From the IMG/VR virus record IMGVR_UViG_3300032770_000001, positions 1 to 64,000 of that record: a DNA stretch of 64,000 nucleotides. The stretch is one strand, 5' to 3'. Positions 17,291-31,344 of the stretch are shown here, one piece after another (position 1 is the first letter of the stretch; each line of letters begins with the position of its first letter). Under the pieces are notes generated by a model that saw only the letters and a list, made by a program, of their open reading frames with translations, did not search any database and was not told the origin of the DNA. The translations under genes were made by a program, and so were the position numbers.

Positions 17291-17366
17291 TGGCAGGGGG
17301 TGAGGGCAACGATCCCCCAACCTTCCGGGTCAAAGCCGGGTGCTCTGCCGATTGAGCTAACCCCCT
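17291..17366 (-). tRNA. trnQ: tRNA-Gln(UUG), atypical T-loop
   Basis: cloverleaf with anticodon loop CT-TTG-AC, G73, encoded CCA; T-loop ATCGTTG. Confidence 0.75.
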
Positions 17367-17369
17367 GTT

Positions 17370-17443
17370 TGGCTGCCGGGGAGGGATTCGAACCCCCATA
17401 CACTGATCCAAAGTCAGCGGTCCTGCCTTTGAACGACCCGGCA
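17370..17443 (-). tRNA. trnQ: tRNA-Gln(UUG), canonical
   Basis: U1-A72, loop CT-TTG-GA, TTCGAAT, CCA. Confidence 0.92.
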
Positions 17444-17525
17444 TCATGTGACTTCTACATCACATTTTTGCGATTTGTATCATAAAAGTGACGTGGGACG
17501 CACTTTTTGCGATATAAATCAATCT

Positions 17526-17611
17526 TGGAGCCGATGGAGGGATTCGAACCCCCGTGGGATTTCTCCGGCAGTTTACAAAACTGCTGCAATCGTCCGCTAT
17601 GCGACATCGGC
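17526..17611 (-). tRNA. trnT: tRNA-Thr(UGU) with long variable arm
   Basis: GCCGATG/CATCGGC, GCAGT-TT-TGT-AA-ACTGC, variable arm C-GGA-GAAA-TCC-CAC, CCA. Confidence 0.85.
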
Positions 17612-17863
17612 CTATGCGCGTCGGGCAAACCCGGTAAAGTCCACCACTGGTTTCGCCTTCGGCTGCGGAGGGTTCTCAATCACGAACTTGAGTTGCTCCG
17701 CAAAAATCTTTTCGTACTCGGCTTTGAGAGCATTCCCTTCGTCGATCAACTTCTGATCTCCGGTGCGGTAGCCCTCGGCTAATCTTTTAGTGAAGGCACG
17801 TCTTGCCTCCAACACTTTGGAACACAGGTAGAGTAGGTCTGACTGCTCATCTGTCAGTTGCAC
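17612..17863 (-). CDS. hypothetical protein
   Basis: ORF between tRNAs, GGAGG SD. Confidence 0.55.
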   Translation of the reverse strand: MQLTDEQSDLLYLCSKVLEARRAFTKRLAEGYRTGDQKLIDEGNALKAEYEKIFAEQLKFVIENPPQPKAKPVVDFTGFARRA

Positions 17864-17885
17864 GATCCCTCCACTTAAGGAATCG

Positions 17886-18098
17886 TTAGCAACATACTCC
17901 GTTCATAGTTTCATGTCGGGGAACGTAACAGCCGGGGCAATCAACGCTCTCATACCAGTCAATCATTTCCTTGACGAACTGTTCCTTTGTCTTGCCCAGC
18001 CGTGCGATTCGTTCCGCCGAGTACATCGGGTGATCGAAACTGCGAATCACCTGCACATGCCCACAACGGTGCTTTACTTCTTGCTGCCCTTCTCTCAT
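17886..18098 (-). CDS. hypothetical protein
   Basis: ORF between tRNAs. Confidence 0.5.
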   Translation of the reverse strand: MREGQQEVKHRCGHVQVIRSFDHPMYSAERIARLGKTKEQFVKEMIDWYESVDCPGCYVPRHETMNGVCC

Positions 18099-18163
18099 AC
18101 GCTTTTCCTAATTAGGCGCTTTTCCGCCTATTTCCGAAATATATCAAAAACCGCCTAAGAACT

Positions 18164-18240
18164 TGGAGCCGCCGAGTGGATTCGAACCACCAACCTCGTC
18201 CCTTACCAAGGGAGTGTTCTACCGTTGAAACTACGGCGGC
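18164..18240 (-). tRNA. trnT: tRNA-Thr(GGU)
   Basis: cloverleaf, loop TT-GGT-AA, CCA. Confidence 0.92.
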
Positions 18241-18241
18241 A

Positions 18242-18317
18242 TGGAGCCAGCGGGGAGGATCGAACTCCCGACCCCCGCGTTACGAGTGCGGTGCTCTACC
18301 AACTGAGCTACGCTGGC
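18242..18317 (-). tRNA. trnT: tRNA-Thr(CGU)
   Basis: cloverleaf, loop CT-CGT-AA, CCA. Confidence 0.93.
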
Positions 18318-18360
18318 ATGTTATTCTGTGTCACGAAACCCCTTAAATCGAGGGGTTTTG

Positions 18361-18591
18361 TTACGCAGAATGTTTGGCGTTCTTCCGTGGGCCTTTACGA
18401 CCTTCCCACTGCGGCAGGTTCTTCCCCGCCACGAACGCCGCTATTCCTTCATACTTCTCACAAAGCCACTTCACGTATGCGCAATCTTTCATGTGCATCC
18501 GCAAATTCCCACCTGTCCGAAGCCCACACCACCCACAGGGTGGTTCTGAGCAATCATTCGGCTCACGTCGAAATGTGGGCTCCGGTAACAT
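18361..18591 (-). CDS. hypothetical protein
   Basis: ORF between tRNAs, CxxC..H..DC. Confidence 0.45.
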   Translation of the reverse strand: MLPEPTFRREPNDCSEPPCGWCGLRTGGNLRMHMKDCAYVKWLCEKYEGIAAFVAGKNLPQWEGRKGPRKNAKHSA

Positions 18592-18596
18592 GATCT

Positions 18597-18673
18597 TGGT
18601 CCGCCCGGAGGGATTCGAACCCCCGAATGACCACGCTAATCAGGCGTGCGCTTTACCAACTGGCTACAGGCGG
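18597..18673 (-). tRNA. trnI: tRNA-Ile(GAU), atypical (U37, short D-stem, 7-nt variable loop)
   Basis: CACGC-CT-GAT-TA-GCGTG, TTCGAAT, ACCA. Confidence 0.7.
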
Positions 18674-18935
18674 AAAACTTTTCAAAAATCGCTTTGCACT
18701 CGCAGGACTCAACACTGTCGGAACCCAGCCCGAAACAATTCGGGTTCTTCCTCCACGTGCACGCTTCGACCGGATCATCCGGCAGACCGTAAGCTTCCTG
18801 CAATTTCTCCATCGCTTGAATCACTCGCTTGTACGAGCTAATCAGGGCACCAGCCTTGCTGAAGCCATCGCCGCGTACTGCTCGGCGTGCCTCTCGCATT
18901 TGCTCGATAATGTCGCCGACCTGATCCCTGTCCAT
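18636..18935 (-). CDS. hypothetical protein
   Basis: ORF whose 3' end overlaps the atypical tRNA-Ile. Confidence 0.4.
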   Translation of the reverse strand: MDRDQVGDIIEQMREARRAVRGDGFSKAGALISSYKRVIQAMEKLQEAYGLPDDPVEACTWRKNPNCFGLGSDSVESCECKAIFEKFSACSQLVKRTPD

Positions 18936-18940
18936 AAACT

Positions 18941-19017
18941 TGGTGGGCACGGTTGGATTTGAACCAACAGCCTTCCGGTTATCAGCCGGATGCTCTAAAC
19001 CATTGAGCTACGCGCCC
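18941..19017 (-). tRNA. trnI: tRNA-Ile(GAU), canonical
   Basis: cloverleaf, loop CT-GAT-AA, ACCA. Confidence 0.93.
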
Positions 19018-25851: not shown

Positions 25852-25929
25852 TGGTGCCCTCGGCGGGATTTGAACCCACGACGCACGAGTTTAGAATTCG
25901 CCGCTCTGACCTGACTGAGCTACGAGGGC
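25852..25929 (-). tRNA. amber-suppressor-type tRNA (CUA), A73
   Basis: GCCCTCG/CGAGGGC-ACCA; by standard numbering GCGAA-TT-CTA-AA-CTCGT (A31.C39 mismatch). Confidence 0.7.
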
Positions 25930-25931
25930 TT

Positions 25932-25977
25932 TGGTGGGGCAGCGGTGAATCAACACCTGCGCTTGCGCTACTGCCCC
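25932..25977 (-). ncRNA. 46-nt mini-tRNA lacking the anticodon arm
   Basis: GGGGCAG-TA-GCGCAAGCGC-A-GGTG(TTGATT)CACC-G-CTGCCCC-ACCA. Confidence 0.7.
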
Positions 25978-25978
25978 A

Positions 25979-26052
25979 TGGCACACCCGGTGGGATTCGG
26001 ACCCACATGCGCGGTGTTAGAGACCGCTGTTCTGCCAGTGAACCACGGGTGT
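25979..26052 (-). tRNA. amber-suppressor tRNA (CUA), Trp-like body, G73
   Basis: ACACCCG/CGGGTGT-GCCA; perfect stem GCGGT-CT-CTA-AC-ACCGC. Confidence 0.88.
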
Positions 26053-26092
26053 ATTTTCAAAAAGACAATCGTCTTTTATTCCGTACAAAACT

Positions 26093-26142
26093 TGGTGGGC
26101 GGTGATGATTTGACTCACCCAGCTTTCGCTGTTTTACCGCCC
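26093..26142 (-). ncRNA. 50-nt mini-tRNA lacking the anticodon arm
   Basis: GGGCGGT-AAAA-CAGC(GAAA)GCTG-GGTGA(GTCAAA)TCATC-ACCGCCC-ACCA. Confidence 0.72.
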
Positions 26143-26143
26143 G

Positions 26144-26225
26144 TGGCACGCTCGGAAGGACTCGAACCTTCGACCCCTCAGTTAAATACTGAGTGCTCTG
26201 AACAAACCAACTGAGCTACGAGCGT
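26144..26225 (-). tRNA. trnK: tRNA-Lys(UUU) variant with A33 and expanded D-loop
   Basis: CTCAG-TA-TTT-AA-CTGAG; D-loop AGTTGGTTTGTTCA; GCCA. Confidence 0.75.
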
Positions 26226-26226
26226 A

Positions 26227-26302
26227 TGGTGCGCGGTGAAGGAATCAAACCCCCGACCTCCGGGTCTTGCGACCCGGCGCTCTAACACTGAGCTAACCGC
26301 GC
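26227..26302 (-). tRNA. tRNA-like RNA with 8-nt or GNRA-closed anticodon arm
   Basis: GCGCGGT/ACCGCGC-ACCA; CCGGGTC-GCAA-GACCCGG; D-loop lacks GG; T-loop TTTGATT. Confidence 0.7.
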
Positions 26303-26303
26303 A

Positions 26304-26335
26304 TGGTGGGCACCCCAACTTTCGCCAGAGCACCC
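26304..26335 (-). ncRNA. 32-nt 12-bp minihelix with GAAA loop and ACCA end
   Basis: GGGTGCTCTGGC-GAAA-GTTGGGGTGCCC-ACCA, six G.U pairs. Confidence 0.68.
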
Positions 26336-26344
26336 GTACAAACT

Positions 26345-26438
26345 TGGAGCAGACGCCGTGACTTTCGTCTCGGTCGCGAATAGAATCTCTTCGCCGTAGC
26401 AATCCGTCGAAGCAATCCCTCAACGCCTTTTCGTCCGC
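26345..26438 (-). ncRNA. 94-nt tRNA-like element with G3.U70 acceptor stem
   Basis: GCGGACG/CGTCTGC-TCCA; CCG..GAC-GAAA-GTC..CGG arm; shares the CCA-AGTTT trailer with other tRNAs here. Confidence 0.45.
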
Positions 26439-26445
26439 GTGCATA

Positions 26446-26880
26446 TTAAGCCCCGATACGATCCTGTATCGGATAGCCTCCCTCAAACTTCAAAAAAAGA
26501 TTTGGAGCAGGAGCAGCCTCCGCGTGTCTCCACAAACCGTAGTTCGAGAGTACACGGCGCTGCTCCTGCGTGAGCGGGACCGTGGCGACAGCCGTCAAAC
26601 CAAGGTTGTCGTCCGGCTCCGAAAACACGGAGTACCCGATTTCTTTGTCTTTCAACTTGTTGATAACACGGAGTAAAGCGGACTTGTCCGGCACGCCGAT
26701 CACCACGAGATGCGGAATCTGATCGTAAGACGGATCGAGACCCTTCGCCATTTCAAACGTGGCGTGGTTGCTTTGAACTATCTGTTGTGCTAGGGAAATG
26801 TCTTGCCGAACGAAGACGTAGAAGTAGTGTGGTGCTGGTTGCTGCTGATTAACCTACAGATCGCCGATTGCTTTACGCAT
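26446..26880 (-). CDS. Pth2-fold (PTRHD1-like) peptidyl-tRNA hydrolase with in-frame amber at 26854-26856
   Basis: AGGAG SD, ATG 26880: MRKAIGDL*VNQQQPAPHYFYVFVRQDISLAQQIVQSNHA...HLVVIGV...L....I.YSVFSEPD....TAVA..P. Confidence 0.8.
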
Positions 26881-26927
26881 TTGGTTTGCGCTCCTAAACA
26901 TGAGATGTGGTAGTTCTCGAAAAGGTT

Positions 26928-30832: not shown

Positions 30833-30895
30833 GTTCGTTCCCTCTCAGGCAACCTTCTGTTCACAAAATCCAACTGTTCATTACGAATGAACGTC

Positions 30896-31250
30896 CGGGG
30901 ACCGAAGTCCCCGGTTCTGTTGCAAGGTGCCGTTCAAACCCCGCCAGCAAACCGCAATTAAGCGGCTGCTGCCATTGCCATTGCCTTTGGAGCGTTAGCA
31001 GTTATGTTTTCCGTGTCCGTTGTACGCCGCCGCCGTGTTGCAAATTAACGGTGGTCGCCAGCACCACATCGGTGCCTCGGTAGGCCACAGCATCCGGGGT
31101 CGTCGCTCTCTGTCTCATGCATCTCCGTCGAAGCCTTGTCACGCCCATATCGCGGTGCAAGTGTCCATCAATTTGAATTGGTGGACGTGCCCGGAATCGA
31201 ACCGGGGTCCGAAAATGTGAATCAGCGCGTTTCTCCATCCGGTATGACGT
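30896..31250 (-). ncRNA. ssrA: circularly permuted (two-piece) tmRNA
   Basis: acceptor piece ...GGTTCGATTCCGGG-CACGTCC-ACCA (3' end 31179) lies upstream of coding piece GGGCGTGAC..TTCGACGG (5' end 31146); G3.U70; tag ANAPKAMAMAAAA* at 30999-30958; P2 helices pair. Confidence 0.92.
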
Positions 31251-31344
31251 ATGCCCAGCCTGTACGCCGAAACGTCAGGCCAAACGGTTCTCCGGATGGT
31301 ATACGACCATCACTACTATAGTACCAGAAAGTTGGGGTATTTAG

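What the first reader, a model, noticed from the sequence alone, without database searches (positions are those of the whole stretch)
25852..26895. Amber-gated peptidyl-tRNA hydrolase co-transcribed with its own two amber-suppressor tRNAs
Seen: AGGAG SD, ATG at 26880, MRKAIGDL, then TAG (26854-26856), then in frame VNQQQPAPHYFYVFVRQDISLAQQIVQSNHA..., the conserved N-terminal motif of a Pth2/PTRHD1-like domain. There is no ATG/GTG/TTG between the TAG and this motif; the track's ATG at 26751 would delete it. In the same direction, 0.4-1 kb downstream, lie two tRNAs with CUA anticodons (25979-26052 and 25852-25929). Elsewhere TAG terminates complete genes (helicase, 923, 13244, 29738) and the giant ORFs have no internal TAG, so this is not genome-wide recoding. 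Known: CUA tRNAs suppress amber codons in competition with RF1, and Pth2 enzymes recycle peptidyl-tRNA. Inference: a readthrough switch, either positive feedback from the phage suppressors or a sensor of release-factor shortage, loosely analogous to prfB autoregulation. It would turn on a ribosome-rescue enzyme.
Basis: partly seen in the sequence, partly recalled or inferred. Interest (0 to 1): 0.93.

Follow-up and report, generated by a model that had tools for sequence, protein, structure and literature searches.

The report
Amber-gated phage tRNA hydrolase gene
A huge phage encodes a Pth2-type tRNA hydrolase that can only be made by reading through a UAG stop with the phage's own suppressor tRNAs encoded next door. 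The same arrangement recurs in more than 100 related phage loci, which gives the "orphan" suppressor tRNAs of cultured jumbo phages a target.

Summary
On the minus strand there is AGGAG, then ATG at 26880, seven more codons, TAG at 26856-26854, and an in-frame 135-codon ORF. Two CUA tRNAs lie 0.4-0.5 kb downstream on the same strand.

The ORF has a Pth2 (peptidyl-tRNA hydrolase 2) fold. Four of its five invariant residues lie between the TAG and the first later start codon, so translation must pass the TAG.

- After clustering at 90% identity, 57 of 73 homologue clusters have SD-ATG-(1-12 codons)-TAG directly in frame with the domain. Three more use TAA.
- A CUA tRNA lies on the same strand within 10 kb in 46 of 50 IMG/VR loci.
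- In other phages a neighbouring or fused HD-type phosphohydrolase carries in-frame TAGs at independent positions.

The window otherwise uses TAG as an ordinary stop, so this is gene-specific recoding and not a changed genetic code.

Cultured phages have the gate (GAP32, CBB, ME3, Arash, RsoM2USA). In XacN1 an ATG follows five codons after the TAG, so the gate there is ambiguous. Their annotations truncate, split or omit the gene, and I found no paper describing it.

The purpose of the gate is inferred: timer, licensing device or self-limiting feedback.

The parts
26891..26895 (-). Shine-Dalgarno sequence AGGAG, 10 nt upstream of the leader ATG
   Evidence: Read directly from the sequence. Related loci have AGGAG or GAGG 6-10 nt before their leader ATG.
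26857..26880 (-). Leader of 8 sense codons (MRKAIGDL) that starts the recoded ORF
   Evidence: In the closest relatives the leader is 7, 8, 9, 11, 12 or 13 codons long and always stays in frame with the domain.
26854..26856 (-). In-frame amber codon (UAG), followed by G. This is the gate.
   Evidence: Homologues keep the TAG: 57 of 73 clusters at 90% identity. The next base is a purine in 58 of 60 gated clusters.
26446..26853 (-). Pth2-fold hydrolase domain, 135 codons plus the TAA stop. Together with the leader and the TAG, the full recoded CDS is 26880-26446.
   Evidence: Pfam PTH2 E 0.024, below the family cut-off. A family profile matches solved Pth2 structures at E 1e-5 and 0.003. The AlphaFold model has pLDDT 87. 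The 13 significant Foldseek PDB hits are all Pth2/Bit1 or related structural-genomics entries. Invariant residues R16, D18, Q27 and H30 lie upstream of the internal ATG 26751.
25979..26052 (-). tRNA with CUA anticodon (A1-U72 pair, G73 discriminator, encoded CCA). It starts 393 nt after the gene's stop.
   Evidence: ARAGORN. Rfam tRNA 56.9 bits.
25852..25929 (-). Second tRNA with CUA anticodon, of a different type (G1-C72 pair, A73 discriminator, encoded CCA)
   Evidence: ARAGORN. Rfam tRNA 60.4 bits. Both tRNA types recur in the closest relatives.
26227..26302 (-). tRNA-like gene in the same cluster. Its anticodon arm is a 7-bp stem capped by a GCAA tetraloop, so it has no anticodon loop. Its role in the module is unknown.
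   Evidence: Rfam tRNA 55.2 bits. Predicted structure. Similar genes occur in L010 and L011.
26147..26225 (-). Atypical tRNA in the same cluster, with anticodon loop UAUUUAA and a long D loop. Its role is unknown.
   Evidence: Rfam tRNA 53.6 bits. ARAGORN misses it at default settings.

Best explanation
**What it is.** The gene is one recoded ORF: SD, AUG, seven more codons, UAG, then 135 codons.

**How it works.**
- Ribosomes start at AUG 26880.
- At codon 9 the UAG is either read by release factor 1, which releases an 8-residue peptide, or decoded by one of the phage's own tRNA(CUA) species encoded 0.4-0.5 kb downstream.
- Only the second outcome yields the Pth2-fold enzyme.
- The amount of enzyme made therefore follows the ratio of functional suppressor tRNA to RF1. 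A functional suppressor is one that has been expressed, processed, has an intact CCA end and is aminoacylated.

**What is shown and what is inferred.**
- Comparative evidence supports this much, up to the point that no protein spanning the UAG has been observed.
- The enzyme is inferred to hydrolyse an ester at the tRNA 3' end, on peptidyl-, N-blocked aminoacyl- or aminoacyl-tRNA.
- In other phages it works together with an HD/HDIG phosphohydrolase that resembles the HD domain of CCA-adding enzymes. The likely shared role is upkeep of tRNA 3' ends.

**Most likely purpose (inferred).** The gate is a licensing or feed-forward device. It limits a potentially harmful tRNA-ester hydrolase to the time when, and the level at which, the phage's own tRNA set is working. 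If the enzyme also acts on the suppressor's own ester, the loop would limit itself.

**Why the UAG sits where it does.** It lies in a non-conserved leader, so the inserted amino acid does not matter and aborted products are tiny.
For: **In the window**
- The anatomy is as described.
- The N-terminal part behind the TAG is indispensable. It holds four of five invariant residues, strand 1 and most of helix 1. There is no start codon there.

**Conservation of the gate**
- 43 of 50 IMG/VR loci are TAG-gated, two of them being copies of the window's own contig, and 68 of 80 metagenome loci.
- After clustering at 90% identity there are 73 clusters: 57 TAG-gated, 5 with TAG followed by a start codon, 3 TAA-gated and 8 ungated.
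- Leader length varies from 1 to 13 codons but is always in frame.
- The base after the stop is a purine in 58 of 60 gated clusters. From memory, this context favours amber suppression in E. coli.

**Link to CUA tRNAs**
- A CUA tRNA lies on the same strand within 10 kb in 46 of 50 loci. In several loci it is the only tRNA present.
- CUA is the commonest anticodon among the 376 tRNAs found in these loci, with 57.

**Independent TAGs in the same module**
- The HD-like gene has TAG at codon 47 in GAP32-like phages and at codon 54 in L032-34.
- Where that gene stands apart (L013 and L037) it has its own ATG-X-TAG leader.
- L023 has a second TAG at about codon 48 of its Pth2-like gene.
- In XacN1 the HD and Pth2 parts are fused in one ORF.

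**Standard code otherwise**
- The window uses TAG as a normal stop.

**Enzyme family**
- Pth2 fold. The HD-like partner matches HDIG and the HD region of a class II tRNA nucleotidyltransferase-family enzyme (entries 3wfo-3wfs, deposited as 'Poly A polymerase').

**Literature**
- The XacN1 and RsoM2USA papers report CUA tRNAs but identify no target gene for them.
Against: - There is no protein or ribosome-profiling evidence for readthrough.
- The amino acid carried by the CUA tRNAs could not be inferred.
- Enzyme activity is untested. The family misses Pfam's PTH2 threshold and lacks the Gly-Lys loop that canonical Pth2 has at the aligned position.
- Some ungated relatives (L049-51, L030 and L038) still keep a neighbouring CUA tRNA. 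The link between tRNA and enzyme is therefore not only regulatory, and the purpose of the gate remains open.
- In 5 clusters an ATG or GTG follows the TAG closely, so those genes could start independently of readthrough.
- The three TAA-gated loci have no suppressor tRNA in the DNA available.
- Co-transcription was not tested.
- Only 64 kb of a 456-kb genome was examined for other TAG-containing genes.
Confidence: 0.78

Rival explanations
1. The short ORF is a regulatory upstream mini-ORF. Ribosomes terminate at UAG and restart nearby at a non-canonical start codon, and the CUA tRNAs are neighbours by coincidence.
For: Most leaders are 2-3 codons long, like known minigenes. In 5 clusters an ATG or GTG follows the TAG.
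Against: - The leader is in frame with the domain in every gated locus, even though its length varies from 1 to 13 codons.
- The stop is TAG in 57 clusters and TAA in 3. TGA never serves as the gate.
- No start codon of any kind is conserved after the TAG.
- Internal TAGs at codons 47, 54 and about 48 cannot be explained by restarting.
- A CUA tRNA is present in 46 of 50 loci.
Confidence: 0.05
2. The phage uses a changed genetic code in which TAG is a sense codon (code 15) in part of its genome. On this view the gene is just one of many recoded, possibly late, genes.
For: Phage-encoded CUA tRNAs are typical of code-15 phages (papers listed). Only 64 kb of 456 kb was inspected. Some relatives have additional TAG-containing genes near the tRNAs.
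Against: - In the window 7 of 48 likely genes end in TAG with normal-looking termini.
- The very large ORFs are open in the standard code.
- Treating TAG as sense does not lengthen ORFs more than treating TAA as sense does.
- The cultured relatives were annotated with the standard code, and XacN1 is reported to have 18 amber stops.
- The TAG-containing genes that I found all sit in the tRNA-linked module.
Confidence: 0.07
3. The gate senses release factor 1, not the suppressor tRNA. When RF1 is scarce or inhibited, readthrough rises and the enzyme is made. This is analogous to prfB autoregulation, with the CUA tRNAs acting only as constant helpers.
For: An early in-frame stop in a translation-related gene resembles prfB. 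Output depends on the tRNA-to-RF1 ratio by construction. The window also carries a tmRNA and many tRNAs.
Against: The product is not a release factor, so the loop is not closed through RF1. The downstream ORF is in the 0 frame, so no frameshift is involved. Nothing here shows that RF1 levels change during infection. The tight physical linkage to the CUA tRNA gene points to the tRNA as the variable that matters.
Confidence: 0.08
4. The gene is a pseudogene, or the TAG is an assembly error.
For: Gene callers truncate the gene. Most of the 89 database homologues cover only about 70-76% of the query.
Against: The TAG is identical in two independent assemblies. It is conserved in more than 100 loci while the protein stays under strong constraint.
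Confidence: 0.01

Closest known systems
Pth2 / PTRH2 (Bit1) peptidyl-tRNA hydrolases (Pfam PF01981). PTH2 genes were already noted in jumbo phages by Iyer et al. 2021 (PMC7824862).
   Same: The alpha/beta fold is the same, with TM-scores of 0.68-0.75 to six different solved structures. The N-terminal R-x-D ... Q-x-x-H-A motif is shared. The link to tRNA biology is the same.
   Different: The family scores below Pfam's cut-off. It lacks the Gly-Lys loop and has its own E-P-D motif. It is almost confined to phages: only 4 MAG contigs among one genome for each of 185,579 species. Activity is untested. The amber gate was not described in that paper.
Stop-codon reassignment in phages (TAG read as sense, code 15; crAss-like and Lak phages)
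   Same: A phage-encoded tRNA(CUA) decodes in-frame TAG, in a host presumed to use the standard code. A role in timing of expression has been proposed for those phages too (paper abstracts).
   Different: Here the genome keeps TAG as a stop. Only one to three genes carry TAG, they sit next to the tRNA gene, and the TAG usually lies in a 2-3 codon leader.
Pyrrolysine and selenocysteine recoding
   Same: A dedicated tRNA that reads a stop codon is encoded near the few genes that contain that in-frame stop.
   Different: The TAG position is not conserved in protein terms and lies in a variable leader or loop, so the inserted residue appears not to matter. The tRNAs have ordinary cloverleaf structures. 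ARAGORN's label 'tRNA-Pyl' reflects only the anticodon. I saw no dedicated synthetase or insertion element, but I did not search for one.
prfB (RF2) autoregulation through an early in-frame UGA
   Same: An early in-frame stop codon in a translation-related gene makes its synthesis depend on the state of the decoding machinery.
   Different: prfB uses a +1 frameshift and senses its own product. Here the mechanism is 0-frame readthrough that depends on a separate RNA gene.
Phage lambda bar minigenes and Pth (recalled from memory)
   Same: Both involve a two- or three-codon AUG-X-stop ORF on a phage transcript with a functional link to peptidyl-tRNA hydrolase.
   Different: The bar minigenes stand alone and act through peptidyl-tRNA drop-off. 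Here the mini-ORF continues in frame into the hydrolase itself.
Synthetic amber-suppressor feed-forward gates (for example PMC7969014)
   Same: The circuit logic is the same: the target gene carries an early amber codon and is expressed only when a suppressor tRNA is present.
   Different: Those circuits are engineered. This one appears to be a natural, widely conserved counterpart.

Membership tests
Pth2 peptidyl-tRNA hydrolase (PF01981) | Pth2 alpha/beta fold | tested here: met
   The AlphaFold model has pLDDT 87. The 13 significant Foldseek PDB hits (1q7s, 2zv3, 3erj, 1rlk, 1wn2 and 1xty) are all Pth2/Bit1 or related structural-genomics entries, with E 8e-7 to 9e-5 and target-normalised TM-scores of 0.68-0.75.
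Pth2 peptidyl-tRNA hydrolase (PF01981) | Sequence match above the family's curated threshold | tested here: not met
   Pfam PTH2 scores 15.3 bits against a cut-off of 23, E 0.024. NCBIfam gives no hit. A profile of 35 family members does reach solved Pth2 structures at E 1e-5 and 0.003.
Pth2 peptidyl-tRNA hydrolase (PF01981) | Conserved N-terminal R-x-D-L ... Q-x-x-H-A motif | tested here: met
   Invariant R16, D18, Q27 and H30, and nearly invariant A31, align with identical residues in 24bt_A and 2zv3_A.
Pth2 peptidyl-tRNA hydrolase (PF01981) | Lysine of the Gly-Lys loop. I recall from memory that this lysine was proposed as catalytic in Sulfolobus Pth2. | tested here: not met
   The profile alignment has a two-residue gap where both solved Pth2 structures have G-K, and the family has no lysine there.
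Pth2 peptidyl-tRNA hydrolase (PF01981) | Hydrolysis of peptidyl-tRNA | not testable with these tools
   This needs an enzyme assay.
Programmed stop-codon readthrough by a dedicated suppressor tRNA | An in-frame stop inside a conserved ORF, kept across diverged homologues | tested here: met
   57 of 73 clusters at 90% identity are TAG-gated, and 25 of 39 at 70% identity. The leader stays in frame despite insertions and deletions.
Programmed stop-codon readthrough by a dedicated suppressor tRNA | A cognate suppressor tRNA is encoded by the same genome | tested here: met
   The window has two CUA tRNAs. 46 of 50 related loci have at least one, on the same strand.
Programmed stop-codon readthrough by a dedicated suppressor tRNA | A protein product that spans the stop codon | not testable with these tools
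   This needs proteomics or ribosome profiling.
Genome-wide TAG reassignment (code 15) | Many genes contain in-frame TAG and TAG is not used as a terminator | tested here: not met
   7 of 48 likely genes in the window end in TAG, with ordinary termini. Only 64 kb of the genome was seen.
prfB-type autoregulatory recoding | A +1 frameshift at the in-frame stop, and a stop that is read by the gene's own product | tested here: not met
   The downstream ORF is in the 0 frame. The product has a Pth2 fold and is not a release factor.

The most novel reading that the evidence does not exclude
The suppressor tRNAs of standard-code jumbo phages may exist mainly to operate this gate. The tRNA(CUA)-UAG pair would be a dedicated reporter, separate from normal decoding, of whether tRNA 3' ends are intact and charged. 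It would control a tRNA 3'-end repair or detoxification module made of the Pth2-like ester hydrolase and the HDIG phosphohydrolase. The enzymes' own activity on the sensor tRNA would close a self-limiting feedback loop. That would be a natural counterpart both of prfB autoregulation and of synthetic amber gates. The anticodon-less tRNA-like RNAs next door could be further parts of the same system.
Probability: 0.25. Interest if true: 0.95.

Novelty: new variant of a known kind. Interest (0 to 1): 0.87.

Why it matters
- **It gives orphan suppressor tRNAs a target.** The XacN1 authors looked for a target of their CUA tRNAs and found none. The RsoM2USA authors named no specific target. GAP32, CBB and ME3 also carry a CUA tRNA near the gene.
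- **It shows gene-specific recoding in standard-code phages.** A natural, conserved, tRNA-gated translational switch exists in phages that otherwise use the standard code. This may also be a starting point on the route to full TAG reassignment.
- **It exposes a systematic annotation error.** Most of the 89 database homologues are called from an internal ATG, and others are split or missing entirely.
- **It can be tested directly.** Several carriers are cultured phages of Cronobacter, Salmonella, Pectobacterium, Erwinia, Yersinia, Acinetobacter and Ralstonia.

Tried and rejected
- **Codon-usage scoring around every stop in the window.** It discriminated too weakly, because antisense frames scored equally well.
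- **tblastn of peptides spanning every stop, against all loci.** It was too noisy, because related phages also match in non-coding frames.
- **Nearest-neighbour typing of the CUA tRNAs against 231 tRNAs from the loci.** Similarities were 55-80% to a mix of Arg, Thr, Lys, Ile and Gln tRNAs, so no amino acid could be assigned.
- **The idea that the CUA tRNAs start translation at UAG.** I rejected it. The SD precedes the ATG and not the TAG, and the anticodon stem of the 25979-26052 tRNA, read, lacks the three G-C pairs that I recall (from memory) mark initiator tRNAs.
- **Single-sequence searches.** The PDB search gave only chance hits and NCBIfam gave none.
- **A profile search for the HD-like partner in the six-frame translation of the window.** It found nothing. 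tblastn with the third gated family also found nothing in the window.
- **Extra candidates from the leader-pattern scan.** Several were judged false: the clamp loader in L050, the homing endonuclease in L052, and others.
- **Six literature searches.** They found no description of the gate. They also gave no citable source for the Pth2 catalytic residues, so that point rests on memory.
Full report
**1. The observation**

On the minus strand the window reads AGGAG (26895-26891), ten bases, ATG (26880), then codons for RKAIGDL, TAG (26856-26854), and an open frame of 135 codons that ends at TAA 26448-26446. No ATG, GTG or TTG occurs after the TAG until ATG 26751, which is codon 35 of the post-TAG piece. 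ARAGORN and Rfam agree on two tRNAs with CUA anticodons at 25979-26052 and 25852-25929 on the same strand. They start 393 and 516 nt past the stop codon. Both have canonical seven-base anticodon loops and encoded CCA ends.

The window matches IMG/VR contig UViG_3300032770_000001 (455,708 bp). A second, independent assembly carries the identical gene including the TAG, so this is not a sequencing error. Gene callers start the gene at the internal ATG: database protein P0001 has 101 aa and is 99% identical.

**2. The protein and why the region behind the TAG is needed**

The post-TAG piece hits Pfam PTH2 only weakly (E 0.024, below the cut-off). The match begins at residue 12 of the piece and profile position 4. 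tblastn against GenBank phages finds 37 records. The listed ones are mostly phages of 180 kb or more, and homology starts at residue 2-12 of the piece, upstream of the internal ATG.

In an alignment of 35 family members the invariant residues are R16, D18, Q27, H30 and L60. Four of these five lie before the internal ATG. A profile of this alignment matches solved Pth2 structures (24bt_A at E 1e-5, M. jannaschii 2zv3 at E 0.003). R16, D18, Q27, H30 and A31 align with identical residues in those structures.

The AlphaFold model is confident (pLDDT 87). Strand 1 covers residues 10-16 and helix 1 covers residues 21-37. All 13 significant Foldseek matches in the PDB are Pth2/Bit1 or related structural-genomics entries. 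A product that started at ATG 26751 would lack strand 1, most of helix 1 and the conserved motif.

The family is divergent. It misses Pfam's threshold and lacks the Gly-Lys loop of canonical Pth2. I recall that this lysine was proposed as catalytic, but I could not find a citable source. "Pth2-fold tRNA-ester hydrolase" is therefore the safe description. Peptidyl-tRNA hydrolase activity is inferred.

**3. The decisive comparison**

They do.
- The first four GenBank homologues I opened all have ATG, one or two codons, then TAG in frame with the domain: MAH* (Erwinia phage Kaldavass), MAQ* (Cronobacter phage GAP32), ML* (Salmonella phage Arash) and MT* (Acinetobacter phage ME3).
- Their annotations truncate the gene (Kaldavass, GAP32, ME3) or split it (Arash).
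- In IMG/VR, 43 of 50 loci have TAG as the first in-frame stop upstream of the conserved strand. In nearly all of them no start codon lies in between and an ATG lies 1-12 codons upstream. Two of the 50 are copies of the window's own contig.
- An SD sequence sits 6-10 nt before that ATG.
- In JGI metagenomes, 68 of 80 loci are gated in the same way.
- After clustering all loci at 90% identity there are 73 clusters: 57 TAG-gated, 5 with TAG followed closely by a start codon, 3 gated by TAA and 8 ungated. At 70% identity the counts are 25, 5, 3 and 6 of 39.
- The leader has 2 codons in 39 of 60 gated clusters. In the window's own subclade it has 7, 8, 9, 11, 12 or 13 codons. It is always in frame.
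- The base after the stop is a purine in 58 of 60 gated clusters. From memory, this is the context that favours amber suppression in E. coli.

**4. Link to CUA tRNAs**

At least one CUA tRNA occurs within 10 kb in 46 of 50 IMG/VR loci. It is always on the gene's strand and usually 0.2-4 kb away. In several loci it is the only tRNA in 20 kb. CUA is the commonest anticodon among the 376 tRNAs in these loci, with 57 genes and 48 distinct sequences.

The window's close relatives carry two or three distinct CUA tRNA types. These include the two types seen in the window: A1-U72 with G73, and G1-C72 with A73. Klebsiella phage RaK2 has an ordinary ATG start and no CUA tRNA within 3 kb. However, some ungated loci (L049-51, L030 and L038) still keep a CUA tRNA next to the gene. 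The tie between tRNA and enzyme therefore seems to be more than regulatory.

**5. More amber codons in the same module**

- In many phages a protein of about 187 aa is encoded directly after the Pth2-like gene, often overlapping its stop codon. It belongs to phrog_14850. It matches NCBIfam HDIG at E 3e-5, and its family profile matches the HD region of a class II tRNA nucleotidyltransferase-family enzyme (entries 3wfo-3wfs, deposited as 'Poly A polymerase') at E 5e-4.
- That gene has an in-frame TAG at codon 47 in the GAP32-like clade and at codon 54 in L032-34. Where it stands apart from the Pth2-like gene (L013 and L037) it has its own SD-ATG-X-TAG leader.
- The 46-residue fragment before the codon-47 TAG matches a separate PHROG family of 46 positions (phrog_26054).
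- In XacN1 the HD-like and Pth2-like parts are fused in one ORF behind ATG-AAG-TAG. The deposited annotation starts at an ATG five codons later.
- L023 has a second TAG inside its Pth2-like gene and two CUA tRNAs.
- A third family, in L012 and L014, has an MT* leader followed by 75-88 codons without a start.

These independent TAG positions cannot be explained by restarting translation or by chance. The window itself has no HD-like gene in its 64 kb.

**6. Not a changed genetic code**

In the window, 48 likely minus-strand genes end in TAA (27), TGA (14) or TAG (7). Reading past two of the TAG stops gives low-complexity sequence in one case and the next gene's signal peptide in the other. The giant ORFs are open in the standard code. 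The cultured relatives were annotated with the standard code. The XacN1 authors read through all 18 annotated amber stops and found no target for their CUA tRNAs. They could not have found this one, because the mini-leader is not an annotated gene. RsoM2USA also has a CUA tRNA according to its paper, and its gated gene (ML*) is not annotated at all.

**7. Mechanism**

What the comparative evidence supports:
- The enzyme can only be made if UAG is decoded, and the phage brings the decoder.
- Output therefore depends on functional suppressor tRNA competing with RF1.

What is inferred:
- The enzyme acts on esters at tRNA 3' ends.
- With the HD/HDIG partner it forms a tRNA 3'-end maintenance module. 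The adjacency and the fusion in XacN1 support a shared function.
- The UAG sits in a variable leader or loop, so the identity of the inserted residue is irrelevant. This points to a regulatory role and not a coding one.

My preferred reading is a licensing or feed-forward gate. It delays and limits a potentially harmful tRNA-ester hydrolase until the phage's tRNA set is working. It could also limit itself if the enzyme deacylates the suppressor. A pure RF1 sensor, restarting after a mini-ORF, partial code change and pseudogene are the rivals, each with the evidence given in its entry.

Co-transcription with the tRNAs is plausible. They share a strand, the gap to the first tRNA-like gene is 143 nt, and no terminator is predicted between them. 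It remains untested.

**8. Comparison with what is known**

- PTH2 genes in jumbo phages were noted by Iyer et al. 2021, in the context of ribosome rescue after tRNA cleavage. That paper does not mention stop codons or suppressors.
- Phage suppressor tRNAs are known from code-15 phages, and as unexplained genes in standard-code jumbo phages.
- Six full-text searches found no description of the amber gate.
- The closest concepts are pyrrolysine-type recoding, prfB autoregulation, code-15 phages and synthetic amber gates.
- I therefore rate this a new variant of a known kind, with high interest because it is widespread, strongly conserved and testable in culture.

**9. Distribution**

The family is almost confined to phages. 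Only four contigs, all from metagenome-assembled genomes, were found among one genome for each of 185,579 species. One of these is TAA-gated and three are ungated. The neighbourhood in a close relative contains other translation-related genes: a ribosomal L12-like protein, an alanyl-tRNA-synthetase-related domain and a cold-shock domain. The window itself carries eleven tRNA or tRNA-like genes and a permuted tmRNA.

Noticed in passing
window 26227-26302 (-); also L010:12538-12611, L011:11402-11477, L011:11007-11081: These are tRNA-like genes with normal acceptor, D and T arms and a CCA end. Their anticodon arm is a long stem capped by a tetraloop (GCAA in the window; GCAA, GAAA and CUCG in relatives), so they have no anticodon. 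They sit between the hydrolase gene and the CUA tRNAs.
   Followed up: partly
window 26147-26225 (-): Rfam calls this a tRNA at 53.6 bits, but ARAGORN misses it at default settings. Its anticodon loop is UAUUUAA, with A where the near-universal U33 should be, and its D loop is unusually long.
   Followed up: partly
L026:10312-10878 and the same position in L021, L022, L024, L031, L035, L036; L032-L034:10306-10872; L013:11194-11796; L037:10640-11200: A second gene with in-frame amber codons encodes an HD/HDIG-like protein of about 187 aa (phrog_14850). It lies just after the Pth2-like gene. TAG is at codon 47 in the GAP32-like clade, at codon 54 in L032-34, and in its own ATG-X-TAG leader in L013 and L037.
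   Followed up: yes
L055:2443-3303 (Xanthomonas phage XacN1, AP018399.1): The HD-like and Pth2-like domains are fused in one ORF behind SD-ATG-AAG-TAG. The deposited annotation (ORF364) starts at an ATG five codons after the TAG. The XacN1 paper reported no target for its two CUA tRNAs.
   Followed up: yes
L012:11966-12439 and L014:9575-10027: A third conserved protein family of 150-157 aa, of unknown function, has an SD-ATG-ACA-TAG leader and no start codon for 75-88 codons. It lies between the Pth2-like gene and the CUA tRNAs.
   Followed up: partly
L061:3620-3970; L111 and L119 near their match positions: These versions of the Pth2-like gene are gated by TAA instead of TAG (leaders MH, MSGFS and MSGFL). 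No tRNA was found in the flanking DNA available.
   Followed up: partly
L023:9971-10345: This Pth2-like gene has two in-frame TAGs, at codon 5 and at about codon 48. Two CUA tRNAs lie upstream, on a 498-kb contig.
   Followed up: partly
L008/L009:12326-12405; L021:16630-16707: These tRNA genes have eight-base anticodon loops that ARAGORN reads as four-base anticodons CUAG and UUAG. They lie next to or near the module.
   Followed up: no
window 30867-31271 (-): This is a permuted (two-piece) tmRNA gene, with Rfam tmRNA_permuted at 78.8 bits and tag peptide DTENITANAPKAMAMAAAA. It lies 4 kb from the module.
   Followed up: no
window 17291-19017 (-): A second tRNA cluster contains repeated isoacceptors: Gln-UUG twice, Thr three times (UGU, GGU and CGU) and Ile-GAU twice.
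   Followed up: no
   Followed up: yes
L018:7826-8060: This copy of the gated gene is cut short by TAA after 71 residues, so it may be disrupted.
   Followed up: no
L057:2977-3340 (Ralstonia phage RsoM2USA, MG752970.1): The gated Pth2-like gene (leader ML*) has no annotation at all in the GenBank record, although its paper reports a CUA suppressor tRNA.
   Followed up: yes
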